A DNA stretch of 41,812 nt from Macrostomum lignano. Taxonomy: Eukaryota. Below are positions 4,850-37,340 of the stretch, piece after piece. The position numbers and the translations under genes are program-made. The stretch lies in NCBI GenBank assembly GCA_002269645.1, contig NIVC01004566.1, forward strand, positions 1 through 41,812, in the 5' to 3' direction. Position 1 is the first letter of the stretch. Every line of letters starts with the position of its first letter. The notes under the pieces were generated by a model that was given only the letters and a program-made list of their open reading frames with translations, was not told where the DNA came from and ran no database searches.

Positions 4850-6866
4850 CTAGTTCCAAAAGTCGCCAGCAGCAAAAGCAGACTGCTGTTGAGCAGCGTA
4901 TTGCTGCGGCTGCTGCTGCTGTTGCGGAAAGCCAGCAGAATTGGCGGCACCTTTGAAGTTTAATCCGGCCATCTGGCTCTGTATCTGTGGGAATTGCCGC
5001 AAACGGTTAATATTACTAATACTATTAAAATTATTATTATTATACATTATTAGCTAAAGTTACTGAATTATTGTGGACATGGCGGGCCGCTGACAGAGCA
5101 AGTAAAAGGGCAAAGAAAGTTCAAATGAGCTTTGAAAATTTCATTGTTGAAAAAAGCAGTTGCAATGGCAGACACCCAAGCCGTGGAATGGGGCATTCGA
5201 AGTTAAAACCCAAATTTGAAGTCTCAAGGCCACAGAGAACTTCATTTATAGTATATACCATAGAAATGGATCTTATACTTAAGTATTGCGATTAAATATA
5301 TTTTTTCGTCTATGTCCATAGACTACTGACGATTAGTTTTCAGTAGTGCAAGCGAACATTTTTTGTCCCCGAGTCATTATTGGGTGTCATTTTCTATGCA
5401 TTGTCTGAATGGGGAGTGGCCTATCTAGTGTATATAAGATCTATAATCTATCCTACAATAAAGTGCTAAAAATTAGTATAGAGGAAACCAAATAAAAAAT
5501 ATTAAGCAACACTTACTTGTAGCAAATAAGCAGACTGATTATTGACATAGCCTGGTGGCTGAAATCCATAGTGCTGCTGCTGCTGCTGCTGTTGCTGAGA
5601 AGACGGTGTCGGCACGCCGCCAAATTGCGGCGGACCAAACTGCCCACCTGTTGAGTAGAGAGCGCCAGCAGTTTGACTGTACAGAGCCGAGAACTGCTGC
5701 TGCTGCTGCTGTTGAGGTTGATGTTGCTGCTGCAGAAATGGATATTGTTGCTGCTGCGAAAATGAATATTGCTGTTGCTGCTCCGGCATAGGCTGGTAGC
5801 CAGTTGAATTGGCTACAGAAGCTAGTTGAGGAGTACTCATCGAGTATTGCATCCCGCCAAAGTGTTGCTGCTGCTGATTGTGAGCTAGAAATCCGCCGCC
5901 TCCACTAGAAGCAGCAGCAGCAGCAGCGGTATTCTGCTGACCATACAAAGCCATGATAGAATCTTTCATAGATTTCTTTGGAGCAGCGGCGGTGTTCGCA
6001 GAATTAGAAGAATCGCTGGCAAACAGGTCGGCAGCAGTGGCGGTCGTGGCGCTGCCCTCGCTTAAGAATGCCAAATCGTTGGCGTGCGAGCTGGCGACTC
6101 CGCCACCGCCACCGCCGCCGCCGCCGCTAGAGAAGTCGCCAAATCCGTCATCGGCCAGACCGCCAAGCAGATCTGGCGGCGGCTGCTGCGGCACTGCTGA
6201 AGGAGGTGCCGGCTGCTGTGGCTGCTGCGGGGGCGGTTGCTCAGGCTTTGATTGAGACGCAGCCTGCGGCGGAGGCTTCACTGCCGCGGTGGTGTTGCCA
6301 GCAGAGCGCCTGGCTGGCGCGGGCGCGGGCGCCGGCAGCTTCGGCGACACGCCGTCAGCGGCGGCAGAGTTAGCAGCGGCGGCAGCTCGTCGCTGAGCAG
6401 TGTTGGTCTTGAGCAGATCGTACACAGCAGCTGGATCGGGTTTAGGCAGCACCCAGTCCCTGGCTAAGTAGCGCTTCTCCTCATACTTAGCCTTGATGAA
6501 CTGCTCAAGCGTGGCGTCCGTCTGCGGCCGACGGAATCCATCCGGCACGTTGGCCTCGTAGGCGGCTCTGGCTAGCGAGTTACCAATAGCGGCCACCCCA
6601 GCCACCTGTTCGGCTGTCCAGGAGTCCAAGTTGACAGATTTCACTCGCGAGATGTGCACGCCCAGCTTCCTGTGGATGCCGGCGCATCTGATGCAGAGGA
6701 ATACGCCAATGTTCCAGCTGGCCCAGCGGGGACTTTTAGCATCGCAGTCAGCGCAGTACTTATTGTCCTCGTCTCTTAGCAGCATGCCCAGCACGTCCTG
6801 GAGTAGGTCCTTCTCGCTCTTTGCAGCTGCCAGCTTGCCAGAGCGGTGTCCAGTGCTGGATGACAT
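4850..6866 (-). CDS. SMAP1: Stromal membrane-associated protein (SMAP1/2-type ArfGAP); exons 6866-5517 and 4984-4850, ~494 aa
   Basis: ArfGAP zinc finger [46 protein letters not shown] and the SMAP motif [11 protein letters not shown]. Donor CAA|GTAAGT (5516) and acceptor CCCACAG|ATA (4985) join in phase 0; stop TAG at 4852-4850. Confidence 0.93.
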
Positions 6867-7523: not shown

Positions 7524-8159
7524 TTATCAAGCAATATAAACTTAAAGTCGCTTTTATTAGAAACACAGGTTATAAACAACGTGGATTATGTAAAAAGTGA
7601 ATTAAAAAATTTGTAGGCCCCCTACTCAAAGTTTTTAAGTATATTAGATCAAGATAAATTGAGCAAACAAGTGTTAGCAAAGTAAACAAAGTAAACAAAA
7701 CAGAGTGCAAAAAGTATATGTGCACTTCTTTTCTAAAAGACTCAGAGTAAATGGCCTACACCACCATGCACCAGCTAAGTATTTTATATTCAAATCAATA
7801 TAGGCCTATTCAATTCAAATATAAATTATAAGCCCCCTACCAATGACAAAGTTATCAAATCAAACTAAATATAGTAACTAACAATAGTATTAGGCCTAAT
7901 GTATAATGTTGTATGTTGTATTTATTAATTTTTAAATATAACTAGGGCATGAGATATTTAGACAATCTATTTGTCTTGTCTTAGTCTGGGTTTTATGCCT
8001 ACTAATTTGCTTTGTTAATGCTCATTGTGCTGGCACAGTGATAGTAACAAAAGAAATAATTTTGTATTAATTAACAACTCTTCAAAAGAGCACAAATAAA
8101 GGCTCTCCTGATCCTAGAGCAAGCAAAAGTCAACTAAAAATGTAAGAATAACTTAATAA

Positions 8160-9100
8160 GATATGTCGTCATAACTGACTAAAGTCCCTAGGCCGCCTAG
8201 CTCTAGGGCCTCGGCTTAAATAGTGATGACACTAAATCTGCAAAACAAAAATCATTAGATTTTTTATTTTTTTCACGTTTGAGTCACCAGTCACACAATC
8301 ATTATTAATATTGGTAAATGAGAAATGTGATATATTTTTGTGATGATTTCGTGATACTCTCATTTCTATAGATTTCAAGGACTACTTAAGTCATCCTTGA
8401 TAAATAAATTTCTTTCGGGCTGCTTTACACTTTTTTAAACAAAACATGTTAAACGAATTGCAAAATTAGACTTAAAAGTAAATTCAGCTATTCCTTACGC
8501 TTATTTATCACTTTTAAATTTAAAAAGCTTCACTACCTTTGATAAAACATTGTTTACAGAAAGTATCAATGTTGCTTTTAATTTATTATTGATTTTATAA
8601 TAATTCCAGTGACTATTCAATATTCGAGATTTTGTTGTGATCTGTTTGATCAAAAACACATAGTACATGCATGAGTGTTAAGACAGCGAAAGGTGCTTTT
8701 TTGTAGTAAATCAGCTGCAATAATAGCAATGAAGCTTACGTTAGCTAAATCTTGTTTGCATGGATTCCTGCCTCCTGCGCAGCGCACTATACGGCACTAG
8801 CATTATATATTTCAATGTTATAAATAATTTTCACCAAACAATTAGTTAATTATTTTTGAGCTTTAGAATAAATCATGTATCTTATTTCAAATTCTTATCT
8901 TAATGGATATTAGAGGTAGGTAGAAAGCTTAGAATTTTAGCAAAATTTTCTTTTTAGTCACACAGTTATGTAGTCAAGTTAAGCAGTGTGCTTATGTGCC
9001 TTTAGTTTGTTAATTTGTCAGTAGCTAGATGCACGTTTTAAGGACCGTTTCTTTCTATACAGTCACAGAAATAGAAAAATGAGTATTAAATGAATAAATC
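8160..9100. promoter_or_regulatory. Putative shared promoter region of the divergent SMAP/ROPN1L pair (CpG-retaining segment)
   Basis: Lies between head-to-head genes. CpGs are present here but rare in 6950-8150. Function inferred only. Confidence 0.3.
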
Positions 9101-9550
9101 GCTTTACTTTTTGATTTATCATATTGGCCTACCTATCATAAACCACTTGCTTTATGAATTTTAAATGATGCCTTTCTGGTATATCTAAATTGTTAAATGT
9201 TCTAAACACATAAAATATACTTCTCCACGAAATTAATTTTGAACCTAATTTTAACTTCAATATCATGGCCCAGTTGTTCCATTTTTTCTCTAGACTTTCT
9301 CTACTTTTCTACAACTTATAAACAAAGTTTACTTAAGAGTAAAAATAAGTTGTGCTTGTTTAATAACTCTTGATAAATATTTCCCTATTTTCTATATCTT
9401 TTTGAAGTCGAAGACCTACTTTATCAATAATTGTTTTCAATAATAAATAAACATTCTAGTTTTTTACTGTAAGTAATCCAAACATTTTTTCTTTCCAGTC
9501 GCCATAGTTTCAAGGCTTCAACAACCAAAATTATCATTCAAGGCTTGGCA

Positions 9551-11607
9551 ATGTCTGGTGAAAACAAAGACAATGGTGACCCCTACTACTGCTCGGAGCA
9601 GATTCAGATCCCGCCCCCATTGCCAGACATCCTGAAGCAATTCACCAAATCTGCAATCCGCACCCAGCCGCCAGATGTGCTGGCTTGGGCAGCCGCTTAC
9701 TTCCGTGCCATGGCCGACGGTGAAACTCCGCCAGTGAAGGAGCGCCTTGAGATGGCAACCGCAACGCAGAAGACGGACACCGGTCTCACTCCCGGTCTGC
9801 TCCGAGTGCTCAACAAGCAGCTGGGCCCAAAGAAGCAAGTTGAAGTAAGCGACATCACAGAAAAATGGAAGGCGCTAAATCTGCCGGAAGAGCGTCTGCA
9901 GGAACTGTTCCAGGTGAATACTGAATGCCATTCAGGGTGCAATCAGCGTATTTTTGTGATATTCGTTTTAGATAGCGAATCCTTTATTAAAATACAGTAT
10001 GCATACATTGTACCACCAGGAATGTGCTCTTAGCGGCTCGATAGTTCTAGCACAGTCCGCTCCGTTCAGCGGGTCAAAAATATTTTTATGACAGGCTGTT
10101 TTTTAGAGGAACTTGGCTCACCTAGCACCTGACTTGGTTACCCTAGCACCTGACAATTGGCTCACCTAGCACCTGACTTGGTTACCCTAGCACCTGACAA
10201 TTGGCTCCCCTAGCACCTGACTTGGTTACCCTAGCACCTGACTTGGCTCCCCTAGCACCTGACTTGGTTACCCCAGCACCTGACTTGGCTCCCCTAGCAC
10301 CTGACTTGGTTACCCCAGCACCTGACTTGGCTCCCCTAGCACCTGACTTGGTTACCCTAGCACCTGACAATTGGCTCCCCTAGCACCTGACTTGGTTACC
10401 CCAGCACCTGACTTGGCTCCCCTAGCACCTGACTTGGTTACCCCAGCACCTGACTTGGTTACCCCAGCACCTGACTTGGCTCCCCTAGCACCTGACTTGG
10501 TTACCCTAGCACCTGACAATTGGCTCCCCTAGCACCTGACAATTGGCTCCCCTAGCACCTGACAATTGGCTTCCCTAGCACCTGACAATTGGCTCCCCTA
10601 GCTCCTGACAATTGGCTCCCCTAGCTCCTGACGATTGGCTCCCCTAGCACCTGACAATTGGCTCCCCTAGCTCCTGACAATTGGCTCCCCTAGCTCCTGA
10701 CAATTGGCTCCCCTAGCACCTGACAATTGGCTCCCCTAGCACCTGACAATTGGCTCCCCTAGCACCTGACAATTGGCTCCCCTAGCTCCTGACAATTGGC
10801 TCCCCTAGCACCTGACAATTGGCTCCCCTAGCACCTGACAATTGGCTCCCCTAGCTCCTGACGATTGGCTCCCCTAGCTCCTGACAATTGGCTCCCCTAG
10901 CTCCTGACAATTGGCTCCCCTAGCTCCTGACGATTGGCTCCCCTAGCTCCTGACAATTGGCTCCCCTAGCACCTGACAATTGGCTCCCCTAGCACCCGGC
11001 GCCCCTAACAACTAAATCAATTTGCACCTTTTTGCACTGAGTTTGCGCCTTTGCAACTGAATTGACTCCCTTACAACTAACTTGGCGGCCTCTAGCAATT
11101 GAATCATTTGTCGCCCTAGCAACTGAAATTGCGCCCTAGAAACTGAATTGTCGCCCTTGCAACTGAATTGAAGCCCTTAAAACCTAACTTGGCGCCCCTG
11201 GAACCCAAAACGACCCTGCTGTATACCCTGTAACCAGTAGCAACACAACACCAAAACAAAATAACGCAAAGACTGGCGAACTCCTAACTACCCAGATCGG
11301 CGACTTCACTGGCAAAGTGGAATGGCTGAAATTCTTCGCCGTCGCTTGCGCCTCCCTGTGCAGCGACCTGACCGGCACCATGAAGCTCATCTGCGAGCAG
11401 CTCACCGCCGATCCTGAGGGCGGCCCGGCTCGAGTTAATTTCGACACTTGGAAGCGATTGTACACCTACCTGTACCAGCTGAACTCAGAGGCCGATCCGC
11501 AAGTGATGGAGGCGGCTCTCGGCTACCTGGCCTCGGATGTCGAGCGTCAGAAAGGCGTCATCCAGCCCAGGAACTTCCTGCACCAGGACTGCCCGCCGTT
11601 GCAGTGA
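9551..11607 (+). CDS. ROPN1L: Ropporin-1-like protein (RIIa dimerisation/docking domain; radial spoke RSP11-like); exons 9551-9913 and 11296-11607, 224 aa
   Basis: YCSEQIQIPPPLPDILKQFTKSAIRTQPPDVLAWAAAYF, then IGDFTGKVEWLKFFAVAC and ICEQLTADPEGGPARV. Donor CAG|GTGAAT (9914); acceptor CTAAC..CCCAG|ATC (11295); phase 0. Confidence 0.93.
10111..10997. repeat. Intronic minisatellite, 21-23 bp units (CCTAGCACCTGACTTGGTTAC / CCTAGCACCTGACAATTGGCTCC), degenerate extension to ~11200
   Basis: Direct tandem copies inside the ROPN1L intron. Confidence 0.96.
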
Positions 11608-12876
11608 TATTCAACTAATACTACTGATAGCATAACCTACTGTCTACGAGTGTTTTGTCTATTAATTTGAAATCATATTTTTCTTGTCGTTTTTTTAAGG
11701 CTTACTACTCGTACTAATAGTAAGTAGATCGCGTTGAGTTATTAAATCTATGAAGGCTATTTTTCACCGCAAAATGCACCAGAAAGATGCGTACGAAGTA
11801 ATTGGACAGACAGATTTTCAGAAGCACGAGAACTCACTAGTTTCATTTGAAGGTCAAGGTTTCGATTTTCTAGCAAACAGGAAATTTAGCCTTAAAATAG
11901 CCACATCTGTAGTTTGTACCTTAAAATAAGCCTAATTAGATTTCCGAGATTTATAACAAAAAACGGCAGTGATTTTTACTACTTGTAAATTATGATTATT
12001 TTTTAATCCATGATATAACTGATAAAGGTATTTTAAACCTTTAATATTTGATCTGTTTGTGCACTGTTTGAATTTTTATTGAAATTTTCAATATTTCCTT
12101 TGCTGTGATCAATACGAGCGTATCTGGCCCAAGTTTCGTAGCAGTCTAACGCAAAAATGTGTTTTTTTTAATTGTTGTTTTTCAATCAAATTCTAGATTA
12201 GTTCTCGATAACAAAGTGAAAGACAGTTTTTTCAGGTGTTAACACTCCCCTAAACCCTGGCTAGGTTTAGAGAAGCTTATATCCACGCAAGACTTACAAC
12301 TTTTTTCAAAATAATATCTACTTATTAACTCAACGAGCCACACCGAGTTTAATAAACATGATATATGTACCCCGTTTGTTTAAATACATGATTTACACAT
12401 TTAGAAAACTTTGTTTTTTTTGTTTGCAACAAGTCAGCAACATATAATGATGATAACATGATTAATAAGCCACAAAGTTATGCTGGCTGTTTTGCTTTTA
12501 GAAAATCATTTTTCCTCTAAAATAAAAAAGAGACCAAGGCCTTGATCAAAGGCCAGAGTAAAAACTTTCTTAGATTTTAACAGATTAATAAAACACAGCT
12601 TTTGCATTTTTTGGAAGGCAAATATTTTTTTTATTAAGCAAATTATCTGTTACAATTTGAATTAATTAATTAATAAGATACAAAATTCACAAGGAGCATG
12701 TAGTTTTGAGTAACACACTTACACTTTATCCGGATGCCTCAAACGAAACTGATATCATAGAAAATGCTTTGTAACACGCGCGCAATATTTTAGCTTGAAC
12801 TATTTTATTTAACCACGATCTGGATAAGGTTTTGAATGAGTTCAAGTGCTGAGTATGCAGTATAAGTTATCAGTGA

Positions 12877-13456
12877 GGGAGATGGGAGGGCAGGGAGATG
12901 GGAGGACAGGGAGATGGGAGGATAGGGAGATGGGGAGGACAGGGAGATGGGAGGACAGGGAGATGGGAGGACAGGGAGATGGGAGGACAGGGAGATGGGA
13001 GGACAGGGAGATGGGAGGACAGGGAGATGGGAGGACAGGGAGATGGGAGGACAGGGAGATGGGAGGACAGGGAAAAGGGAGGACAGGGAGATGGGAGGGC
13101 AGGGAGATGGGAGGACAGGGAGATAGGAGGACAGGGAGATGATGGGAGGACAGGGAGATGGGAGGACAGGGAGATGGGAGGACAGGGAGATGGGAGGACA
13201 GGGAGATGGGAGGACAGGGAGATGGGAGGACAGGGAGATGGGAGGACAGGGAGATGGGAGGAAGCAGCAGGGAGATGGGAGGACAGGGAGATGGGAGGAC
13301 AGGGAGATGGGAGGACAGGGAGATGGGAGGGCAGGGAGATGGGAGGACAGGGATATGGGAGGACAGGGAGATGGGAGGACAGGGAGATGGGAGGACAGGG
13401 AGATGGGAGGACAGGGAGATGGGAGGACAGGGAGATGGGAGGACAGGGAGATGGGG
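12877..13456. repeat. Purine-rich minisatellite, 16-bp unit GGGAGATGGGAGGACA (~36 copies)
   Basis: Direct tandem copies between the convergent ROPN1L and TFIP11 3' ends. Confidence 0.97.
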
Positions 13457-13544
13457 ATAGCAGAAAAGGATAAGTAATTTGGCCAATCAGGATAAGCGTG
13501 AAGCTAGCCAGATTATTCAATAAAGAAAAGAATGGAGTTGAAGA

Positions 13545-16500
13545 TCACTGCCGCATGGTGGCCCTATTCATAACATCGTCAAGGGACACTGGGTGCCATT
13601 GGCCCTCAGTCAGCCAGTAAATTACGCCGCGTTCAACGCAAATTTGTAGCCGACCAAAATTGAACACCTGCTTGCCGTGATGCCGGTGGCCGGTGGGGGC
13701 GAACACGATGCCGTGCTCCTGGGCCCGGCGTTCTAGAAGGTCCCTGGCGCCCAGCAGGCCGTGATTATAGTTCACTACAGTGGCTGGCTGAGCCTGCGGC
13801 GCTACGGAAGAGCTGGAAGCGGTGGCCGCGGCGGCGGCAGCGGCAGCGGCGCCGGCGGCTACAACGGCAGCCGGTTCCTGGCCGGAGAAGGCGGCGTCCA
13901 TCAGGCGAAGGGCCTGCGGGATGGTGAATTAAATAATTAGAGTAGAAATATATTAAAATAGAGGAGAGGGAGGTGAGAAAGCAGGATGGAAGAGGAGAGA
14001 TGAGAAAAGAGAGATGAGAGGAGAAGAGAGATGAGGGGAGAAGAGAGATGAGAGGGAAGAGAGATGAGGGGAGAAGAGAGATGAGGGGAGAAGAGAGATG
14101 AGAGGAGAAGAGAGATGAGGGGAGAAGAGAGATGAGAAAGGTTAGGAAAGAGGAAGTGAGGGTAGAACAGGCAGAGAAAGTATAACGATGCAGAGCGGGT
14201 AGGCGAAAATCGGGTGCACAGACCTGACCCAGCTGGTGCTGCACCCCGGGCAGGTCCAGACACGCAGGTGGCAGCTGGTCCCGCCAGCCGGCGTACCAGG
14301 CGGCCACCTGGGCCATGTCGACACCGGGGCTGGCTAGCCAGGCCGACAGGGCCCGGTGAAATCCCGGGAAGAAGCCGCGCTCGAGCAGCGAAGCAATCTG
14401 CTGCGGACTGAGCAGATCCCACCAGGCCTTGCACCAGACCCACTGCTCCAGCGGCTGGCCAGACGGGTCAATTCGCATCCCGGACAGACAGTCGATCAGC
14501 TTGGGCAAAACGTGCCGCTGCAGGAAGGCCGCCAGCAGTTGGGGTCGCACGGCGCCGCGCCATGGCGTTAGGACGCCTTTGGCACTCAGGTCGTCCGGGC
14601 GCCACTGGCCAAAGCACTGGCCGAGCTTCTGCAATACCTGCAGTATTCGTGTGTTAAGGTATTGGTTATACAGGCTTTGGCATCATTGCCAGATCCGCAA
14701 TATTTAGCAGCAGAAAACTACGGATAAGCATCAGATAGCAATGGATAAGCATCAGATCCCAATGGATAAGCATCAGATCCCAATGGATAAGCATCAGGTC
14801 ACAATGGATAAGCACCAGATCCCAATGGATAAGCATCAGGTCACAATGGATAAGCATCAGATCCCAATGGATAAGCATAAGAACCCAATGGATAAGCATC
14901 AGGTCACAATGGATAAGCATCAGGTCACAATGGATAAGCATCAGATCCCAATGGATAAGCATCAGATCCCAATCGATAAGCATCAGATACCAATGGATAA
15001 ATACCAGGTCACAATGGATAAACAGCAGTCTCTCACCTGCTCGTGCATGGCATCCAGCGCCAGCTCGGCAGACCAGGGCTGCAACCACTCGTGCACAGGC
15101 TGCGGATCCCTAGTCGGATCCCACAGTTGCAGCTCCCTCTGCAGCGCGGGCTTCACAACGGTATTAATCAGATCTTCAATGCCGGGCGCCTGGCCTCGCA
15201 GCGCCTGCACCAAAGCCAGAGCTTCGGCCGGTTGCCTCGGACTCCACTGGGCCAGCGCGCGTCGAACCTGCGGCAGCAGCGACTCGGACAGGATGGCGTC
15301 AATTGAATCGTTGGCAGGCGCCAGAGCTTCGCGCACCAGCCGAGCGCAAGCGGCGCCTCTGCCGGGCTCTAGCAGAGGTTGCCAGCCATCCAGAGAGCGC
15401 CTAGCAGCCGGTGTAACCATAGCAGCGGCTAGCGGCCGGTACGCGGCCGGCGCTGACTGCAGAAACTTCTTGGCCAGGTCGCACACGTCCGGCAGGCCGG
15501 CGCCCCGGTTAGCAACCGAGTCGTAGGCGTCCAGCAGCCGGATGAGGCTGTCCAACTCGGCTAGCTGAACAGCCCGACGGCCTCGCTGCAGTCGCTGGGT
15601 CTCGGCTCGCAGGCTGGCCAATTTGTCGCGATCCTCCCGCTGCTGCCGATCGGTTCGAACGATTTCAGCCTCGGCTGCGTCGGCCAATCTGGCCAGGTTG
15701 TGCATCAGGGCGGGACAGTCGAACCGGCGCTGGCCACCCTGCTGCTGCTGGCCCTCGGCTGCTGCCGAACCGAGCGCGTCATCGTCCGCGCCGGCCGCCG
15801 ATCGGGATAGCGCCGAATAGCCGTCGTACACCCGCTGCTGAGGCCCGGTCATGTCGATCACCTGGATAGAATATTGGGTAGATACGATAGCTGGGATTAA
15901 ACGATAACTACGAACTGGTATAGGGTAAAATTAACAACAACCTGAAGGACTAGGGGTACTACAGGCTGAAAAACTGAATAGAGACAGTAACAATGGCCTG
16001 AAGGACGAGATCGAGAGAGGGGGTAACAATGACCTGAAAGACAGGAGAGAGGGGGTAAAATGATCTGAAGGACAGGAGAGGGAGGAAAATAAAACCTGAA
16101 GGACTGTAGGAGAGGGTAACTATAACCTGAAGGACTGTAGGAGAGGGTAACTATAACCTGAAGGACTGTAGGAGAGGGTAACTATAACCTGAAGGACTGT
16201 AGGAGAGGGTAACTATAACCTGAAGGACTGTAGGAGAGGGTAACTATAACCTGAAGGACTGTAGGAGAGGGCAACTATAACCTGAAGGACTGTAGGAGAG
16301 GGCAACTATAACCTGAAGGACGGTAAGCTGAAGGATTGAATGATACACCTGAAGCCTGAAGAACCAGAGGGTAGCGTCGCGTGATTGAAGAAGGTCCGAG
16401 AATTGCAGGGAAACGGAGTTATAATTCACTCCACAATTGCATTGCAATAGACAGAACAAACCTTGACTTTGGCGCCATTGTCTAGCACTGGCACGCCGCC

Positions 16501-16899
16501 TGGCGCTTTTTTAGCTCCGTCCCGTAGAATCTCTTCTCGTGTTTTTATGGCGTACCTTGGCTGCTGCTGCTGCTGACTTCGCTTGTAGCGGGCTGCAGCA
16601 GCAAGTGAGGCGGCTTTGGCGGTCGCGTCCGTCACCGTCTCTTCGTTGCCGCGCCTGGGCACCGGCGCCGATTGTTCGGGATAAAATCCCACAGCCTCTT
16701 TGCCTTTGCGCTTTGTAGCCTGAACGGGAGTGACAATACCAGCTAGGTCTTTGCCGAGGCCTTTGCCCTGCTTGTAGCCCATCTGCTCCAGCAGCTTCAT
16801 GCCGATGCCGCGGGTGTGCCGCTCCCAGTGGCCGAATTGGCCGCCGCCGCTGCTGCTCGCATCATCCGGCGCTTCCGCTGCTCCTCTCCTCCTGCATCG
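13545..16899 (-). CDS. TFIP11: Tuftelin-interacting protein 11 (Ntr1/Spp382/STIP; G-patch + GCFC/NTR domain); exons >=16899-16462, 15861-15037, 14637-14224, 13913-13545; 5' end unresolved
   Basis: [29 protein letters not shown] (G-patch), KVK|[46 protein letters not shown], and C-terminal [18 protein letters not shown]. All four exons join through GT-AG sites in phase 0. In-frame stops at 16908-16900 block extension further upstream. Confidence 0.92.
13985..14140. repeat. Intronic purine-rich minisatellite, ~17-bp unit GGGGAGAAGAGAGATGA
   Basis: Tandem copies in TFIP11 intron 13914-14223. Confidence 0.9.
14722..15022. repeat. Intronic minisatellite, 21-bp unit CAATGGATAAGCATCAGATCC (~14 copies)
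   Basis: Tandem copies in TFIP11 intron 14638-15036; source of the MDKHQIP ORF repeats. Confidence 0.95.
15939..16322. repeat. Intronic minisatellite, 31-bp unit GAGAGGGTAACTATAACCTGAAGGACTGTAG
   Basis: Tandem copies (homogeneous 16100-16320, degenerate before) in TFIP11 intron 15862-16461. Confidence 0.93.
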
Positions 16900-17079
16900 T
16901 CATCATCATCTGTACGCCGATGTGCCGCCGGCTTCAAGCCGCTGCTCCTCGTCATCATGCTTCTTGGACTGGCGCCGCTGAGCGGGTATGGATGGGATGT
17001 CGGCGCTCTCGTCCGGGTTGCGCCGTTACGTTCCGACCGCGATTGCCGAAACTCCAGTAATTCTCCAGCCTAGAACTGA

Positions 17080-17520
17080 AATATAAATCTACGAAACCAG
17101 TAATCTCCAGACTAAAACTGTAATATGAATCTACAAAACCTGTAATATTGAATCTAAAACTGTAATATGAATCTAGAAAACCTGTAATATCGAATATAAA
17201 ATTAATATGAATCTACTAAAACTGTAATATCGATCTAAAACTGTAATATGATTGAATCTACAAAACCAGTAATCTTCAGCCTAAAACAGTAATATGAATC
17301 TACAAAACCTGTAATATCAAACTCAAAACTGTAATATGAATCTAAAAAACCGGTAATCTCCAGCCTAAAACTATAATATGAATCTACAAAACCAGTAATC
17401 TTCAGCCTTAAACTGTAACATGAATCTACAAAACCGGTAATATCAAACTCAAAACTGTAATATAAATCTCAAACCAGTAATCTCCAGCCCAAAAATGTAA
17501 TTCTAGTCTAAAAAAACCAG
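17080..17520. repeat. Degenerate ~21/42-bp tandem array (AAAACTGTAATATGAATCTAC-like) between DNAJC17 and the TFIP11 G-patch exon
   Basis: Recurring AAAAC(C)TGTAAT and GAATCTAC motifs. Confidence 0.85.
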
Positions 17521-17776
17521 TAGTAATAGCATCGAAGACTATTTCTTTACAGTCTTAAAGTCGTTACAGGGTGTAAAATCACTAAGGACTCGGATACATC
17601 TATCTAACGTTACAATCGGCCATATTAAAAAAACTAGAAAAATATTAACAGTTTATTATTTACTTTCTAATCGTAGTAAGAAACTGTATAAATGCAATGT
17701 ATTTGACTTTAAAACAATATACATGCAGCATAAAATCAACTGATCAGAATGCCACAAGTTGAGTGCTATACACATA

Positions 17777-18917
17777 CTACTGATCATCAGTAGGCGCAGC
17801 AGATGCAGCATTATCATCATCCGTACTATTCTTATCGTCGCCAGGATGAGCGCGTTTGCCACGCGAAAACATTTTAATTAGATCGTCGGCTGTCACTTTG
17901 CGCAGCCAATCGCCAGACGGTCGGCCCTGATTGGTTGGCAGCCAATCGCCTGTAGTGGCTGCCGATGCGGCAGGAGGCACGGGAGTCTGCTGGTGCTGCT
18001 GCTTCTGGCCCTGCAGCCACACAGCCGACAGTCCACTTGACCCGCTGTCAAGGCCTTGACCAACCTGTCCGCGTCGTCGTGTCTACGAAACTCGACAATA
18101 GCGACACCACCGCTGCCACCGCGACTGGATTTCTTACTACTAGCCTTGCCCGGCCTGTACAACAGGGTGACCACCTCGCCGAAGCTGGAGCACAGCGACT
18201 TCAAAGAGGCCTCCGACTGACTAGAACAGTCATCCTGATCTCCACGCCAAGTCAATTTTATTGTCGGCAGATTGTCTTTATCCTTGTCGGCAGCCGCCTG
18301 TCGGAGCTCCTGCCTGAGTAGCTCCTGCTCCCTAGCCAGAACGTCGTTCAGCTCCCGCCTAAGCCGCTGCTTCTCCCTCTCTAGGCTGGCTTCATCCTCC
18401 TGTCGGCTCCGGCCGCTTGCAGACGTCGCACTCTCAGCGGCAGCTGCAGCAGCTTCGGCTGCCTCAAGTTGCTCTTTGAATCGGCGCCGGCCTACCCCGA
18501 GAGCCCGGGCCCGCTCGGCGGCAGCCTGACGGCCACGGCGCACTTTATCGTAGGCAGCTCGGGCGGCTGCGTCAGTGAGCAGTTGCAGAGCCTCGGACAG
18601 TCGACGGAAACGTTGAGCAGCCAGCGGATCGTCTGGATTTTTGTCCGGATGAACTTTGAGCGCTGCGGTGCGATAGGCTTTGGTGATCTATCAGGGGATG
18701 GATTAGAGAGGTTTAGTTAGCACCTTAGGTAAAAAGCTGGAGTAAAAATGCCTGTATTTTAGTAAACCGATCCCTCGCCATCTAATTAGTTTTGCAATGG
18801 GCCTTTATTTCAACTTTATTATTCACAATTGAATGCACAACTTACCTCCTTTTCTGTAGCATTCTCATCAATGTTAAGTAGTTTATATAAATCTTCATTT
18901 TGTATTGGTGTATCCAT
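17777..18917 (-). CDS. DNAJC17: DnaJ homolog subfamily C member 17 (Cwc23; J domain + RRM); exons 18917-18846 and 18687-17777, with an apparent 1-nt frameshift near 18054
   Basis: Exon 1 MDTPIQNEDLYKLLNIDENATEKE, donor GAG|GTAAG, acceptor GATAG|ATC. Exon 2 ITKAYRTAALKVHPDKNPDD (HPD motif)...AARAAYDKVRR, RRM TIKLTW..FGEV..AIVEF. The conserved RRM end WLQGQ is in a different frame; adding one G in GTCAAGGCC gives VKGLDSGSSGLSAVWLQGQ. Confidence 0.9.
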
Positions 18918-22900: not shown

Positions 22901-24869
22901 CATGTAAAGATACATTAGGCTATATTTAAAGTTTGTATATATAAGTATATATATAAATTTAATAATTGATATTTAGCTAGGTTTTTTATGTGCACTGCAA
23001 AGTATGCATATTATACCATCTTTGAGTTTTAAAATTGCACTCTAAAACTAACAAAGTGGGTATAGTTTAGGTATCATTTTATAAGTTATTTTCTTTTTAA
23101 GCCTCATTTGTAATGCCTTAGAATAAGATCAAGAAATATAAGACAAGAAGTCAAGGCATATATATACAAGATAAAAAAACAAGACACAAGAAAATATCCA
23201 TAAATATGTTTATATTCCTAATTTTTTTAACTAAGAGAAATTGCATTCACTGACTCAGCCTTATAATTGCACCTTGAAATTGGGTACAAAGTGCAATTTT
23301 ATGCCTTATCTCTTATAAAACTATATTTTTAGCTTGGAATTGCTTATTATTCAAATTTAAAACAAAATAAAACCAATGTAACAATGCTATGATTCAGGCA
23401 CAAAAATGGTGCAAATATAGGTACAAATGCCTTTTTGCCTTTGTAAGAGATGATATTTGGATAAACATAATCATTTAAGTTCTATCTTTGTATTTTTACT
23501 TTTATCTTATTGTTATTGGAGTAAATAGGACCTAGCTGTGGTTGCTACTACAAGTGCATGCTAATTATCTTTTTGACCTTATGCCATTTACCAATCTTGG
23601 GAGTCAGGACTATTTTAATCATTTACTTTAGTACTGGACACTAGGCTTTTATCTTAGCCCAATATCTGCCAGTATTTGTGCTTGACATAGAGATTAGCAA
23701 CTCGGAAGGTGCACTTCTACCAATTTCACCTGAAAGAGACACTAGACAAGCATGGATATCACAATTGACTTCTAGAGCTACATTGCTACTGACACTGATA
23801 GAGATTGTCCTCTCTTACTACATTTGGTCTAAGTATTGCTTGTTTTCCCCCATGATAATGCAAAGATGGAATATATATTTAGCCAAAATTTAAAACAAAA
23901 ACTTTTAAAATGCCCAATATATAATAATGCATGCAAAAATATCTCATATGACATTTTTAGGGGTTGTAAAGAAGCAATCTAGAGGATAATATTAGCATTG
24001 TGCAAAAATTTTTGCCTGGCATAAAATCAGGTAAAATGTCTAATTATAGCACTGCAATCCAATAAATATAGGCCTAGCAGTATTTTTAAAATGATACATT
24101 ATGGCTGATAACTAAAATACTATATATATAATCACAATAGTTTTGAATTTAAATACAAATTACTTTTTATAACCACCAAAGATGTTTTTTCTTAGCTTTT
24201 AATAAACATATTTACATTGTTTAAATAATTAAGACTTAGATATAAGTTATATACTATACTAAACTTTAGTTATAAACTAGGTTAAGTAATATAGATAATA
24301 TTATTTACTTAAGACCAAGTTATTCTGCAATAATTTTTATTTAAATAAGAAGATTATATATAAGATAATCAGAAAACTGAAAACTGAAATCAATAATAGA
24401 ATTTTTCTCCCTAAGTATAAAATTATATTATATAGGGGTATATATCCATAATACCTTCCAAGCTAGCTAATCTAGCTAGCTAGCAAAAGACCTAGCCAAG
24501 GTAAGTTTCAAAATGCCTATTCAAAAGATATAGAAAAAGTATTTAAATAGATAACAAAGCATTTGGCTTTAATAATATAGTCATTATTATTTTTGACATG
24601 TACCTAGAAAATTACATTAATTTTAGCTTAGGTTTCTTTCATACATATAGATTAGTCATTTTTTTGGTCAAAAAATAAATCAGGGGGTTATATATATGTG
24701 TTATGTGTAAAAGATTTTAACATGAAAATAAATATAATTGACATATTAGTTATTCTAGACATGTGGAGTCTCAATCAATGTCAAAAAGTTTGTTGGAGTG
24801 TATTGGCAGAGCTACAACTAAAGTTGGTATTGTCAATGCAGTTTAGAATAGAAGCAGCAATTCTATTAT

Positions 24870-25332
24870 CTTAAAACCTGATGCAAAACATTGTCTTTAC
24901 TAAGTAAAAAGCGAACAATGAGGCATCATTCATCAACTGCACTTAAATTTGGCCTTAGTATTGTCTTAGTAATTTTCCATGCAGTTAATATAAATACAAT
25001 GTTTTTCTCCATTGCATTCCATTTTTCCAATGTGCATTTTTCCATTGCACATAGAAAGCAATTTTGTGATAGACTACCAAATGCATATAGTTGCATGTCA
25101 AAGTATACTGACCATTCATCATTATAAATCATTATGCTAAGTTTTATAAACTTTTCAATGATTAGTAAAAGGGTAAGAATATCTTATGAGACAATGGGCC
25201 AAATAATATCATTGCAAGATAAATCACCACATTCTACTATTCTAAAAATCCAGATCTAGGTACCTTTCTAAGAACCTTGATAGTATTTGAGCTTTCTACC
25301 AAAAGGGATTTGTCAATCTCATAAGGCATTTT
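24870..25332 (-). mobile_element. Decayed Merlin (IS1016/IS1595-like) DDE transposase fragment
   Basis: Motifs in the expected order across frames: EIDKSLL (cf. EIDESLF), IWIFRIVECG (cf. WVFGxxER), IYNDEWSVY (cf. IxSDxWxxY), HLVVYHK (cf. HxxVNHS). Confidence 0.6.
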
Positions 25333-26110: not shown

Positions 26111-28570
26111 ATGGAAGTTGAGCAGGTTGAGCTGCTGTGCAAGCAGCTGTATGAGACGCAGGATGCTTCATTGCGCTCAGAGGCTGAGAAAGCGCTAGTG
26201 AACTTGACCAATGATCCATTGTGCATGTCAAAATGTCAACTGCTGTTGGAACGGGCCAATTCTCCCTATTCTCAGCTGGTTGCCAGCAACAGTCTCACTA
26301 AACTGCTGTCAAAGCCTTCGCTTAGTCTGTCAGTTGAAGAGCGCCTAGAGATGCGCAATTATGTGCTGAGGTACTTAGCCCAGCATTCTGGCAAGCTAGT
26401 TAGCTACGTGCAGCAGAGCTTGGCCCAGCTGTTCTGCCGTCTGACTCGGCTGGGCTGGTTCGACTCGGACAGTAAAGAGGATTGGCCGTTTCGCAATGTT
26501 GTTCAGTTAATTACTAATTTTCTGCAGAGACCGGACTCGCAGCATGTGCTGATTGGAGTGCAGCTGCTCTCACAGTTGGTTGCCGAGATGAATACGTTTG
26601 CTGATCAGGTGAGCATGTTAGTCACTTGGAAGTCATAGGCCTTCCAATGCAGTTACAAAATAGGTTTCTGTTAATTAGTGTGCTAGGTCCAGGTGTTCTA
26701 ATAAGTTTGCTATGCTAGTTGTGCAAAAATAGTTATTTGCCCTAATTCTTTGCTAGATGTGCTAATTAGTGTGCTAGGTGCTCTAATTGGTGTGCTAGGT
26801 GCTCTAATTGGTGTGCTAGGTGCACTAGTTGGTGTGCTAGGTGTTCTAATCGGTGCGATAGGTGTTCTAATTGGTGTGCTAGGTGCTCTAATTGGTGTAT
26901 GCTAGGTGTTCTAATTGGTGTGCTAGGTGCTCTAATTGGTGTGCTAGGTGCACTAGTTGGTGTGCTAGGTGTTCTAATTGGTGTGCTAGGTGTTCTAATT
27001 GGTGTGCTAGGTGCTCTAATTGGTGTGCTAGGTGTTCTAATTGGTGTGCTAGGTGTTCTAACTGGTGTGCTAGGTGTTCTATTTGGTGTGCTAGGTGTTC
27101 TAATTGGTGTGCTAGGTGTTCTAATTGGTGTGCTAGGTGCTCTAATTGGTGTGCTAGGTGTTCTAATTGGTGTGCTAGGTGCTCTAATTGGTGTGCTAGG
27201 TGCTCTAATTGGTGTGCTAGGTGCTCTAATTGGTGTGCTAGGTGCTCTAATTGGCGTGCTAGGTGCTCTAATTGGTGTGCTAGGTGCTCTAATTGGTGTG
27301 CTAGGTGTTCTAATTGGTGTGCTAGGTGCTCTAATTGGCGTGCTAGGTGCTCTAATTGGTGTGCTAGGTGCTCTAATTGGTGTGCTAGGTGTTCTAATTG
27401 GTGTGCTAGGTGCTCTAATTGGTGTGCTAGGTGCTCTAATTGGTGTGCTAGGTGCTCTAATTGGTGTGCTAGGTGCTCTAATTGGTGTGCTAGGTGCTCT
27501 AATTGGTGTGCTAGGTGCTCTAATTGGTGTATGCTAGGCTGCTAGCGCAGGGTGTATTAGTTTGTTACGCTTTCAAAATATACTAATATTCATAAAATGG
27601 AAACATCAGGCCTTTATACCGCTTTTTTACTAGCTACTACTACTGTTAGTACTAAGCTTTACCTCGCCATCTGCCTAATTAACCTCCCCTGCAGGAGTCC
27701 AGCCGCTCCCTGAGCATGCACAGGAAAATCGCTTCCTCATTCCGCGACTCTCAGTTATTCGAAATATTCCGACTCGGCTGCTCTCTGCTACGCGACGCGT
27801 CCTCGAATTTGAAATCGCTCAGCAGCTCGGTCGCCGATCCGTCATCAACCGAGCACAATCTGCTAGCGCACACGCTTCGCCTAGTAAAGAACTGCTTGAA
27901 CTTTGATTTCATCGGCACAGCTGGCGACGAATCAGCCGACGATTTGAGCACCGTCCAAATACCGACCTCTTGGCGGCCGGCCTTCTTCGATCAGGACTGC
28001 GTACTGCCCGGCCTGTTCTTTGAGCTGTTCTCCGGATTGCCTGCCAGCCTGGCTCCGCTGTCCCTGGCCTGCCTAGTCCAGGTGGCCTCAATCCGCCGCT
28101 CCCTGTTCTCCAATGCCGAACGGGCCGCATTTCTTAATTCGTTGGTTCGCGGAGTTCGCGACATTCTGCGCAATCCTGTTGGTCTGAACGATCCGTCGTG
28201 TTATCACGAATTCTGCCGACTGGTTGCCCGGCTCAAGTCTAATTATCAGCTTGGCGAGTTGGTTCGGATTGAAGCCTATGATGAGTTTATTAAACTCATT
28301 GCCGATTTTACTGTTCGCAGCTTGCAGCTGTACAATTTTGGATCGAATAGCGTGCACTATCTGCTGTCTCTATGGCAACGCATGGTCGCTTCGATACCGT
28401 ATTTGAAAGTTACCGAGCCGCACTATTTGGAGGCCTATGTGCCAGAGATTGTAACGGTATGTTTATTTGTGTTGGTTGTAATTGCCAAAATTTATTGGTT
28501 CTCCAAAGCAGGTCGACAGATGGACAGATGGATAGATAGTATAGATAATTAGATAGTTAGATAGAAAGAC

Positions 28571-36630: not shown

Positions 36631-37340
36631 GACAGGACCAGCTTACACAGATCATCGAAGACAGGAACAGCTGACATATCATAGGGAGACAGGAACAGCT
36701 GACATATCATAGGAGACAGGATCAGCTGACAGATCATAGGAGACAGGAACAGCTGACATCGTAGGAGACAGGACCAGCGCACATATCATAGGAGACAGGA
36801 CCAGCGCACATATCATAGGAGACAGGACCAGCGCACATATCATAGGAGACAGGAACAGCTGACATATCATAGGGAGACAGAAACAGCTGACAGATCATAG
36901 GGAGACAGGAACAGCTGACAGATCATAGGAGACAGGAACAGCTGACATATCATAGGGAGACAGAAACAGCTGACAGATCATAGGGAGACAGGAACAGCTG
37001 ACAGATCATAGGAGACAGGAACAGCTGACAGATCATAGGAGACAGGAACAGCTGACAGATCATAGGAGACAGGAACAGCTGACAGATCATAGGAGACAGG
37101 AACAGCTGACAGATCATAGGAGACAGGAACAGCTGACAGATCATAGGAGACAGGAACAGCTGACAGATCATAGGAGACAGGAACAGCTGACAGATCATAG
37201 GAGACAGGAACAGCTGACAGATCATAGGAGACAGGAACAGCTGACAGATCATAGGAGACAGGAACAGCTGACAGATCATAGGAGACAGGAACAGCTGACA
37301 GATCATAGGAGACAGGAACAGCTGACAGATCATAGGGAGA
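36631..37340. repeat. Minisatellite, 27-bp unit GACAGGAACAGCTGACAGATCATAGGA
   Basis: Tandem copies upstream of KIF1; source of the MICQLFLSP ORF. Confidence 0.96.

What the first reader, a model, noticed from the sequence alone, without database searches (positions are those of the whole stretch)
13545..18917. DNAJC17 (Cwc23) and TFIP11 (Ntr1/Spp382), known physical partners, are tightly tandem: candidate splicing-factor operon
Seen: same strand, with under 0.9 kb between the DNAJC17 stop (17777) and the TFIP11 G-patch exon. About half of that gap is a minisatellite. An AATAAA lies at 17657-17652 and strong acceptors at TTTCAG| (17076) and TTCTAG| (17070). No separate CpG-island/AT-flank promoter of the kind seen for other genes is evident. 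From the 17070 acceptor one frame is open for ~90 codons. Established: yeast Cwc23 binds Ntr1/Spp382 in Prp43-dependent spliceosome disassembly; flatworms resolve polycistrons by SL trans-splicing, and their SL ends in AUG that can serve as initiator. Inference: a functionally coherent two-gene operon, with TFIP11 possibly initiating on the leader AUG (or at ATG 16958).
Basis: partly seen in the sequence, partly recalled or inferred. Interest (0 to 1): 0.8.

Follow-up and report, generated by a model that had tools for sequence, protein, structure and literature searches.

The report
Tandem flatworm splicing-factor gene pair
Two splicing-disassembly genes (DNAJC17 and TFIP11) lie head-to-tail in the flatworm Macrostomum lignano at a spacing typical of that species' very common operons, but this contig's copy of TFIP11 lacks its start, so the proposed way of starting translation cannot work.

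Summary
The window is a whole 41.8-kb contig (NIVC01004566.1) of the Macrostomum lignano Mlig_3_7 assembly. It is one of at least three near-identical copies of this locus.

**Confirmed:** the gene identities (DNAJC17, TFIP11), the shared strand, the ~0.7-0.9 kb gap, the 42-nt minisatellite, the AATAAA and the two acceptor-like sites.

**Defects in this copy as assembled:**
- DNAJC17 lacks one base at 18036/18035, so its annotated ORF stops at 17893, not 17777.
- The TFIP11 5'UTR, ATG and TIP_N-coding part (583 nt in the paralogous contig) are reduced to a 211-nt remnant riddled with small deletions.
- The ~90-codon frame from acceptor 17070 or ATG 16958 is out of frame with the G-patch. It stops at 16797.
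- The G-patch frame is closed upstream by three TGAs. Initiation on the leader AUG or at 16958 is refuted.

**Operon idea:** it remains plausible but untested, and ordinary.
- About 15% of M. lignano genes are assigned to operons by a published rule: same strand, repeat-adjusted gap under 1 kb, downstream gene SL trans-spliced.
- This pair meets the first two conditions. The third needs RNA data I could not reach.
- The linkage is absent at seven loci from other animals.

Interest is low.

The parts
18846..18917 (-). DNAJC17 exon 1 coding part (ATG 18917-18915; 24 codons)
   Evidence: Translation and GT donor at 18845. Matches the start of NCBI protein P0023/P0024.
18688..18845 (-). DNAJC17 intron (158 nt, GTAAGT...TAG)
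   Evidence: Splice sites read directly. The length agrees with the paralog gene call: 1163 nt for 334 aa.
17777..18687 (-). DNAJC17 exon 2 coding part. The intact-type frame ends at TAG 17779-17777. As assembled, the ORF ends at TGA 17895-17893.
   Evidence: J domain E=8.6e-22 and RRM_1 at 20.3 bits. Named DNAJC17 homologs at 36-43% identity. NCBI model P0023 ends at 17893.
18035..18036 (-). Site of one missing base that frameshifts DNAJC17. The site is G in contig L001 and T in contig L003.
   Evidence: Three-way alignment and difference list.
17652..17657 (-). AATAAA, the likely DNAJC17 poly(A) signal, 120 nt after the intact-frame stop
   Evidence: Pattern search: the only minus-strand match in the gap. 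Function is inferred.
17054..17501 (-). Intergenic 42-nt minisatellite, 10.7 copies, 80% matches. Each unit carries TTACAG.
   Evidence: TRF and motif count. Also present in paralog contigs L001 and L003.
17070..17081 (-). Acceptor-like TTTCAG| (17076) and TTCTAG| (17070), in the last repeat unit
   Evidence: A leader ATG joined at 17075 reads ATG TTC TAG. Joined at 17069 it gives a 91-codon off-frame ORF.
16837..17047 (-). Shredded remnant of the TFIP11 5'UTR, start codon and TIP_N-coding part of exon 1
   Evidence: Colinear with L001 9898-10480 in 26 blocks, 92% identity over 200 columns, 23 internal deletions of 1-37 nt. Score 121, against 13-31 for control exons and 20.6 +/- 6.5 for shuffles.
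16900..16908 (-). Three consecutive TGA codons closing the G-patch reading frame upstream
16462..16836 (-). Intact part of the TFIP11 first coding exon (FGHWERH..., G-patch), ending at a GT donor
   Evidence: Pfam G-patch E=1.9e-14. 99% identical to P0001. Exon end.
15037..15861 (-). TFIP11 exon (VIDMTGPQQ...HEQ), start of the GCFC domain
14224..14637 (-). TFIP11 exon (VLQKLGQ...QLGQ)
13545..13913 (-). TFIP11 last exon, stop TGA 13547-13545

Best explanation
The region is one redundant copy of a tandem DNAJC17 -> TFIP11 gene pair, seen so far only in Macrostomum lignano, in the Mlig_3_7 assembly.

**Intact configuration (contig NIVC01001013.1, locus L001)**
- The DNAJC17 stop and the TFIP11 ATG are 823 nt apart.
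- 448 nt of that is a minisatellite, so the repeat-adjusted gap is about 375 nt.
- From the predicted poly(A) site to the first acceptor-like sites the gap is about 130-190 nt.
- This puts the pair in the size class that the species' own literature treats as SL-resolved operons.

**Most likely mechanism (inferred, not shown)**
- DNAJC17 is transcribed from a promoter upstream of 18917.
- The polymerase reads through the AATAAA and the minisatellite.
- The TFIP11 mRNA is released by SL trans-splicing at an acceptor a few tens of nucleotides upstream of its own ATG.
- TFIP11 is translated from its own ATG, not from the leader AUG.

**This window's copy**
- Both ORFs are broken as assembled: one missing base in DNAJC17, and a deletion-riddled 211-nt remnant in place of 583 nt of TFIP11 5'UTR and exon 1.
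- This is most likely a consensus artefact of a redundant long-read contig. A truly degenerate homeolog is less likely.
For: **Source and copies**
- The window is the whole contig. The P0001 cluster holds a Mlig protein on a 41812-bp contig, and the record is NIVC01004566.1.
- The paralog loci L001 and L003 carry the same pair in the same order.
- L001 is more than 99% identical to the window across DNAJC17 and the spacer.

**Gene identity**
- P0001 (821 aa) has TIP_N, G-patch and GCFC domains.
- P0001 matches human TFIP11 in 8ro2 at E=1.8e-97.
- The top hits of the DNAJC17 query are named DNAJC17.

**Operon class**
- The published M. lignano criterion is: same strand, repeat-adjusted gap under 1 kb, second gene SL trans-spliced. 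The operon mode lies near 100 bp. 10,458 genes (15%) are assigned to operons, and 18% of those genes are in operons that start with a non-trans-spliced gene (PMC8629364).
- 45% of genes with human homologs are trans-spliced.
- The published acceptor motif [T/C]TNCAG is present upstream of the ATG in L001: TTTCAG, GTTTCAG and ATTGCAG.
- UniRef models P0026 and P0027, which I take to derive from an earlier assembly, splice the DNAJC17 stop region (CAGTA|GTATGT) to acceptors just upstream of the TFIP11 ATG. This is weak evidence because they may be ab initio predictions.

**Defects in the window copy**
-.
- NCBI calls no CDS for TFIP11 on this contig.
- The DNAJC17 missing base falls exactly on a G/T difference between the other copies.
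- Contig L003 also shows scattered 1-nt indels near its end.
Against: - No RNA evidence could be reached: no SL-read, poly(A) or precursor data for this locus.
- In the Mlig annotation DNAJC17 (Mlig017391) and TFIP11 (Mlig019197) carry different transcriptional-unit prefixes at L001. The RNA-seq assembly therefore did not join them. The authors note that such units often break in repeat-rich spacers.
- In L001 a good cis donor (cgcag|GTGAG) lies 56 nt upstream of the ATTGCAG acceptor. A short first exon with its own start site is therefore possible.
- The linkage is absent at every outgroup locus examined. Nothing shows selection for the arrangement.
- The artefact reading of the shredded exon is an inference from its pattern, not a test.
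Confidence: 0.55

Rival explanations
1. The two genes are independent transcription units that happen to be neighbours. TFIP11 would have its own promoter in the non-repeat part of the spacer or at the end of the minisatellite, perhaps with a short first exon and a 56-nt 5'UTR intron. No polycistronic RNA would be made.
For: - The two genes carry different transcriptional-unit name prefixes at L001.
- A GTGAG donor followed 56 nt later by an ATTGCAG acceptor lies upstream of the ATG in L001.
- A canonical AATAAA follows DNAJC17.
- The linkage is not conserved in Hymenolepis, Opisthorchis, an unidentified relative, Capitella, Ridgeia, Bicyclus or Gigantopelta.
Against: - The repeat-adjusted spacing falls in the mode that the published analysis finds for trans-spliced operon pairs, not in the broad mode for non-trans-spliced pairs.
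- Conserved housekeeping genes are preferentially trans-spliced in this species.
- A poly(A) signal between cistrons is normal in operons (general knowledge of SL-resolved operons).
Confidence: 0.4
2. The damage in this copy is real. The contig would represent a homeolog or haplotype of the neopolyploid genome in which TFIP11 lost its start and TIP_N domain through a burst of small deletions, and DNAJC17 acquired a frameshift. In that case it is a decaying duplicate pair.
For: - The copies differ by other structural variants: about 1 kb between window 25290-24096 and L001 655-2865, and minisatellite copy numbers. They are therefore distinct loci or haplotypes.
- The assembly is known to retain duplicated large-chromosome sequence.
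- No CDS is annotated over TFIP11 on this contig.
- The remnant is not at a contig end.
Against: - Twenty-three separate deletions fall within 583 nt, while the flanks are more than 99% identical with almost no substitutions. That is not how neutral decay looks.
- The four downstream TFIP11 exons are intact and 98-99% identical to the paralog.
- The DNAJC17 gap coincides with a between-copy G/T variant, as expected from a consensus error.
- The assembly comes from noisy PacBio reads assembled with Canu and polished with Pilon.
Confidence: 0.35
3. One reading: TFIP11 of this locus starts on the AUG of the spliced leader joined at 17075 or 17069, or at ATG 16958.
For: - The acceptor-like sites exist, and a 91-codon frame is open from 17069.
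- The M. lignano SL ends in ATG.
Against: - That frame is not the G-patch frame, and it stops at 16799-16797.
- Joining at 17075 gives ATG TTC TAG.
- No AG between 17110 and 16823 puts a leader ATG in frame with the G-patch. The one in-frame site, at 16822, lies inside the G-patch coding sequence.
- In the intact paralog an in-frame TAA lies 24 nt upstream of the genuine ATG.
Confidence: 0.02

Closest known systems
SL trans-splicing-resolved operons of Macrostomum lignano (Wudarski et al. 2017, PMC5730564; Ustyantsev & Berezikov 2021, PMC8629364)
   Same: - Same species.
- Two same-strand genes with no opposite-strand gene between them.
- Repeat-adjusted spacer well under 1 kb, with a repeat inflating the raw distance, as the authors describe for operons.
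- [T/C]TNCAG motifs upstream of the second gene.
- Two-gene operons are the commonest size (75%).
   Different: - The defining feature, SL reads on the downstream gene, could not be checked.
- The two genes carry different transcriptional-unit prefixes in the public annotation.
- In this contig the downstream gene lacks its 5' end.
Yeast NTR spliceosome-disassembly complex: Cwc23 with Ntr1/Spp382 (PMC6044358; PDB 5y88)
   Same: - The two window genes are the animal orthologs of two subunits that bind each other in yeast.
- Both yeast proteins appear as hits in 5y88, chains T and U.
   Different: - The yeast genes are not reported as an operon.
- I did not find a direct DNAJC17-TFIP11 contact in animals. 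The two DNAJC17 papers I searched do not mention TFIP11.
- No DNAJC17 chain appeared among the PDB hits, although the list does include spliceosome entries.
- The partnership in flatworms is therefore inferred from orthology.
C. elegans operons (Blumenthal & Gleason 2003, as cited in PMC8629364)
   Same: - Polycistronic pre-mRNA resolved by 3' end formation plus SL trans-splicing.
- Intercistronic distance of about 100 nt.
- Mostly two-gene operons.
   Different: - M. lignano uses a single SL, not a dedicated SL2.
- Spacers are often inflated by repeats.

Membership tests
M. lignano SL-resolved operon (criteria of PMC8629364) | Adjacent genes on the same strand, not interrupted by an opposite-strand gene | tested here: met
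   DNAJC17 and TFIP11 are both on the minus strand. Nothing is called between them in the window or in L001.
M. lignano SL-resolved operon (criteria of PMC8629364) | Repeat-adjusted intergenic distance under 1 kb | tested here: met
   L001: 823 nt from stop to ATG, minus the 448-nt minisatellite, leaves about 375 nt. Window: 700 nt from stop to acceptor, minus about 425 nt of repeat, leaves about 275 nt.
M. lignano SL-resolved operon (criteria of PMC8629364) | Downstream gene carries the 35-nt spliced leader on its mRNA | not testable with these tools
   No RNA-seq, SL-read or transcript data were reachable. The gene IDs are absent from the searchable papers and supplements.
M. lignano SL-resolved operon (criteria of PMC8629364) | A single precursor RNA spans both genes | not testable with these tools
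   Only indirect hints exist. The different transcriptional-unit prefixes argue weakly against. The fused UniRef models argue weakly for.
M. lignano SL-resolved operon (criteria of PMC8629364) | Trans-splice acceptor motif [T/C]TNCAG close upstream of the second gene's start | tested here: inconclusive
   The motif is present: TTTCAG at 17081-17076, and TTTCAG, GTTTCAG and ATTGCAG in L001. However, it occurs 2.4 times per kb per strand by chance, and ten of the eleven matches in the gap are the TTACAG of repeat units.
TFIP11 / STIP / Ntr1 family | G-patch domain followed by a GCFC domain | tested here: met
   Pfam G-patch E=1.9e-14 and GCFC E=1.5e-39. The paralog protein P0001 gives PDB 8ro2 (human TFIP11) at E=1.8e-97.
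TFIP11 / STIP / Ntr1 family | N-terminal TIP_N domain and an initiator codon (animal members) | tested here: not met
   Absent from the window copy. The G-patch frame is closed by three TGAs at 16908-16900 with no upstream ATG. Both are present in the paralog protein P0001.
DNAJC17 / Cwc23 family | N-terminal J domain with an HPD motif | tested here: met
   Pfam DnaJ E=8.6e-22. 'KVHPDKNP' is read directly from the translation.
DNAJC17 / Cwc23 family | C-terminal RRM-type domain, and best matches being DNAJC17 orthologs | tested here: met
   RRM_1 scores 20.3 bits, just under the 20.7 cut-off. The top 20 or so hits are named DNAJC17, at 36-43% identity over 74-83% of the query, and most have DnaJ plus RRM_1. 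The test used the repaired, paralog-type sequence.
DNAJC17 / Cwc23 family | Uninterrupted ORF through the RRM and C-terminal tail | tested here: not met
   A one-base gap at 18036/18035 shifts the frame. The annotated product P0023 is 290 aa and ends at 17893.

The most novel reading that the evidence does not exclude
The intact copies of this locus are a genuine SL-resolved two-gene operon that arose within the Macrostomum lineage. It would place two predicted physical partners of the spliceosome-disassembly (NTR) complex under one promoter, giving an animal operon that co-expresses subunits of one complex in the manner of bacterial operons.
Probability: 0.45. Interest if true: 0.35.

Novelty: new member of a known kind. 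Interest (0 to 1): 0.2.

Why it matters
If the pair is co-transcribed, it would be a tidy example of an animal operon that couples two subunits of one complex. It would bear on whether metazoan operons are selected for co-regulation or are only tolerated. That case is weakened here because the arrangement is not seen at any outgroup locus examined, and because roughly one M. lignano gene in seven is already assigned to an operon.

The more practical lesson is about data quality. This contig is a redundant copy with local consensus damage or decay. Fine-scale inferences about start codons, frames and leader-AUG use drawn from it are unreliable. They should be made on the intact paralogous contig instead.

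Tried and rejected
- **Rescuing introns.** I looked for a small intron that would restore the DNAJC17 frame (a 26- or 31-nt GT..AG around 18030) or the TFIP11 frame (a 24-nt GT..AG around 16915). I rejected these by reasoning. They are too short, have the wrong length modulo 3, or remove conserved residues (WLQGQ). The paralog shows a simple one-base difference instead.\n- **Leader AUG at every AG.** I joined the leader ATG to every AG from 17110 to 16800. None gives an in-frame complete G-patch.\n- **Diverged paralog or gene-conversion tract.** I first read the TFIP11 5' island as about 60% identical to the paralog (MAFFT). A gap-tolerant alignment shows 92% identity in 26 colinear blocks. 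The difference is therefore a pattern of deletions, not substitutional divergence.\n- **RNA-level evidence.** I searched for the gene IDs and names in papers and in the supplements of PMC8629364, PMC5173321 and PMC5816591. Nothing was found. The Wasik et al. 2015 genome paper is not held.\n- **Other RNA features.** I looked for an SL RNA gene or another Rfam RNA in the window. There is none.\n- **Small-intron sizes.** I tried to gauge typical small intron sizes from the neighbouring ArfGAP gene, to judge the putative 56-nt 5'UTR intron. It was uninformative.

Full report
**Source of the sequence**

A protein search with the conceptual TFIP11 translation returned a 99%-identical Macrostomum lignano protein, P0001 (BOX15_Mlig019197g1, 821 aa). 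Its 90% cluster also holds P0023 (BOX15_Mlig017391g5, 290 aa, 'partial'), which lies on a contig of exactly 41,812 bp. Looking up P0023 gave record NIVC01004566.1 of assembly GCA_002269645.1 (Mlig_3_7), covering window 28923-7893 in reverse. The window is therefore a complete contig of that assembly.

The assembly was built with Canu from PacBio reads and polished with Pilon (PMC5730564). It is known to keep duplicated copies of large-chromosome sequence: 46% of scaffolds were removed by later deduplication (PMC8629364).

**What is in the region (all on the minus strand)**

DNAJC17:
- The ATG is at 18917-18915 and exon 1 ends at 18846. The intron is 158 nt (GTAAGT...TAG) and exon 2 starts at 18687.
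- Pfam finds a J domain (E=8.6e-22) and a borderline RRM_1 (20.3 bits against a cut-off of 20.7).
- The best database hits are named DNAJC17, from molluscs, annelids and vertebrates, at 36-43% identity over 74-83% of the query.

TFIP11:
- The exons are ...16836-16462 (G-patch), 15861-15037, 14637-14224 and 13913-13545, all with clean GT/AG borders.
- Pfam finds G-patch (E=1.9e-14) and GCFC (E=1.5e-39).
- The paralog protein P0001 matches human TFIP11 in PDB 8ro2 at E=1.8e-97.

Spacer:
- The AATAAA at 17657-17652 is the only one on that strand in the gap.
- A 42-nt minisatellite of 10.7 copies spans 17501-17054.
- TTTCAG| ends at 17076 and TTCTAG| at 17070.

DNAJC17:
- Across DNAJC17 and the spacer the window is nearly identical to the paralogous locus L001 (NIVC01001013.1; DNAJC17 8015-9177, TFIP11 10001-13673).
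- One base is missing between 18036 and 18035.
- As assembled, the ORF leaves the RRM frame and stops at TGA 17895-17893. That is what NCBI annotates (P0023 ends ...LAIGCAK).
- The missing base sits exactly where the other copies differ: G in L001 and T in L003. A consensus error is the likeliest cause.

TFIP11:
- Identity with L001 collapses between window 17047 and 16837, then resumes at FGHWERH (16836).
- L001 has 583 nt here: 5'UTR, the ATG at 10001 and about 160 codons including the TIP_N domain. The window has 211 nt.
- A gap-tolerant global alignment shows that the 211 nt are a colinear subset of the 583 nt. There are 26 blocks at 92% identity over 200 columns, separated by 23 internal deletions of 1-37 nt.
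- The alignment score is 121. Five control GC-rich exon stretches of equal length score 13-31, and 200 shuffles score 20.6 +/- 6.5.
- The third copy, L003 (the end of NIVC01002991.1), has the L001-type exon 1, though with scattered 1-nt indels.
- The NCBI record for the window contig calls no CDS between DNAJC17 and the next gene.

**Consequence for the proposed initiation**

- The G-patch is read in the frame I call frame 1. Upstream it is closed by TGA TGA TGA at 16908-16900, and its first ATG is at 16800, inside the G-patch.
- The ~90-codon frame from acceptor 17070 and ATG 16958 are both in frame 2, which ends at TGA 16799-16797.
- A leader ATG joined at 17075 reads ATG TTC TAG.
- I joined the leader ATG to every AG from 17110 to 16800. 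None gives a complete in-frame G-patch.
- In the intact paralog an in-frame TAA lies 24 nt upstream of the ATG. None of the candidate acceptors upstream of the L001 ATG puts a leader ATG in frame (read).
- TFIP11 therefore uses its own ATG, which this contig lacks.

**Artefact or real decay?**

For an artefact:
- Twenty-three deletions fall in 583 nt, while the flanks show almost no substitutions.
- The downstream exons are intact at 98-99% identity.
- The DNAJC17 gap lies at a between-copy variant.
- The assembly is based on noisy reads.

For a real degenerate copy:
- The contigs differ by other structural variants.
- The remnant is not at a contig end.
- No gene model was placed there.

I put this at roughly 60:35 in favour of an artefact. 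It cannot be settled without reads.

**Is the pair an operon?**

The relevant knowledge is specific to this species.
- M. lignano has one 35-nt SL that ends in ATG. About 30% of its genes are trans-spliced.
- 10,458 genes (15%) are assigned to operons by a rule: same strand, repeat-adjusted spacer under 1 kb, and an SL on the downstream gene.
- The operon mode is near 100 bp once repeats are subtracted. Of the genes assigned to operons, 75% are in two-gene operons and 18% are in operons that begin with a non-trans-spliced gene (PMC8629364).
- 45% of genes with human homologs are trans-spliced.

How the pair measures up:
- In L001 the stop-to-ATG distance is 823 nt. The minisatellite accounts for 448 nt, leaving about 375 nt.
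- From the expected cleavage site after AATAAA to the acceptor-like sites the distance is about 130-190 nt.
- The two structural criteria are met, and the spacing sits in the operon mode.

What remains open:
- The decisive criterion, SL reads on TFIP11, cannot be tested with the tools at hand. The gene IDs and names appear in no searchable paper or held supplement.
- Weakly against: at L001 the two genes carry different transcriptional-unit prefixes, Mlig017391 and Mlig019197. The authors say such units often break in repeat-rich spacers.
- Also against: a GTGAG donor 56 nt upstream of the ATTGCAG acceptor in L001 could define a small 5'UTR intron behind a separate first exon.
- Weakly for: two UniRef models join the DNAJC17 stop region (CAGTA|GTATGT) to acceptors just upstream of the TFIP11 ATG (P0026, P0027). 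I take these to come from the earlier assembly, and they may be ab initio predictions.

I put co-transcription at about 0.5-0.55.

**Conservation of the linkage**

I inspected 10 kb on each side of TFIP11 or DNAJC17 in seven other genomes.

| Anchor gene | Genome | Neighbours |
|---|---|---|
| TFIP11 | Unidentified relative, 39% identity (ENA contig) | Upstream same-strand ORF looks like a prostaglandin-E-synthase-2-type protein |
| TFIP11 | Hymenolepis weldensis | No DnaJ gene; tblastn with DNAJC17 negative |
| TFIP11 | Opisthorchis felineus | No other gene called within 10 kb |
| TFIP11 | Bicyclus anynana | No DnaJ gene |
| DNAJC17 | Capitella teleta | No TFIP11 |
| DNAJC17 | Ridgeia piscesae | Downstream same-strand gene has no TFIP11 domains on record |
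| DNAJC17 | Gigantopelta aegis | No TFIP11 |

None shows the pair. The 10-kb reach is short for trematode-sized genes, and the informative congeners (M. cliftonense, M. hystrix) are not in the collections. As far as tested, the adjacency is specific to Macrostomum.

**The functional-coherence argument**

- Cwc23 and Ntr1/Spp382 are partners in yeast. Cwc23 is part of the NTR complex and binds the Ntr1 C-terminus (abstract of PMC6044358). Both are chains of the yeast ILS structure 5y88, which appeared among the hits for each window protein.
- DNAJC17 is described as the vertebrate ortholog of Cwc23 (PMC5958099).
- The two DNAJC17 papers I searched do not mention TFIP11. No DNAJC17 chain was among the PDB hits. 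An animal DNAJC17-TFIP11 contact is therefore an inference from orthology.

**Verdict**

The genes and their arrangement are real. The operon reading is reasonable but unproven, and it would be one more member of a very large, already described class. The specific initiation mechanism is wrong. The copy in this window is defective at the 5' end of TFIP11 and in the DNAJC17 tail, probably through assembly error. Interest is low.

Noticed in passing
window 16837-17047 (minus strand) versus L001 9898-10480: The stretch is a 'shredded' colinear copy of the TFIP11 5'UTR and exon 1: 23 small deletions in 583 nt, with flanks more than 99% identical. The pattern is unusual and fits either a local consensus failure or a burst of microdeletions.
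   Followed up: partly
window 18035-18036; L001 8917; L003 ~647: The single missing base that frameshifts DNAJC17 coincides with a G/T difference between the other two assembled copies.
   Followed up: yes
whole window, e.g. 93-1478, 10113-10996, 12876-13455, 26751-27530, 30324-32353, 36631-37345, 39157-39986, 40671-41542: At least 14 minisatellite arrays (periods 16-42 nt) cover about a quarter of the contig. Every TFIP11 intron holds one (31/62-nt, 21-nt, 17-nt), and a 16-nt array starts about 90 nt after the TFIP11 stop. Several have extreme strand skew (GC skew down to -0.83 at 30.5-32 kb).
   Followed up: partly
UniRef proteins P0026 (1118 aa) and P0027 (354 aa); L001 9175-9990: Public gene models, which I take to be from an earlier assembly, fuse DNAJC17 to TFIP11. 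They splice out the DNAJC17 stop codon (donor CAGTA|GTATGT) to acceptors just upstream of the TFIP11 ATG. This is either a prediction artefact or a trace of read-through RNA.
   Followed up: partly
L001 9909-9964: A possible 56-nt intron (GTGAG...ATTGCAG) lies in the TFIP11 5'UTR of the intact copy. Its donor and acceptor are both lost in the window copy.
   Followed up: no
window 24096-25290 versus L001 655-2865: A roughly 1-kb length difference between the two contigs lies in the AT-rich region upstream of DNAJC17. It shows they are distinct haplotypes or homeologs rather than one locus assembled twice.
   Followed up: no
L004 (ENA ERZ25070786 ctg145728l) 10001-12199: An unidentified organism carries an intronless TFIP11 (732 aa, 39% identical) amid reverse-transcriptase and DDE-transposase ORFs. 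A prostaglandin-E-synthase-2-like ORF lies 870 nt upstream on the same strand.
   Followed up: no
window flanks: about 26066 onward (+), 9515-11607 (+), about 4969-6856 (-): The neighbouring genes are an exportin-4-like gene divergent from DNAJC17, a 236-aa gene with no domain hit that is convergent with TFIP11, and an ArfGAP gene. The DNAJC17-TFIP11 pair is bracketed by opposite-strand genes, so any operon would have only these two members.
   Followed up: partly
gene identifiers Mlig017391 / Mlig019197 / Mlig000474: The Mlig numbers look ordered by transcriptional-unit length. The DNAJC17 unit cluster ranks above the TFIP11 cluster (~2.7 kb) although the DNAJC17 mRNA is only ~1.2 kb. This hints that some DNAJC17 unit extends about 1.5 kb further. 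It is a lead only.
   Followed up: no
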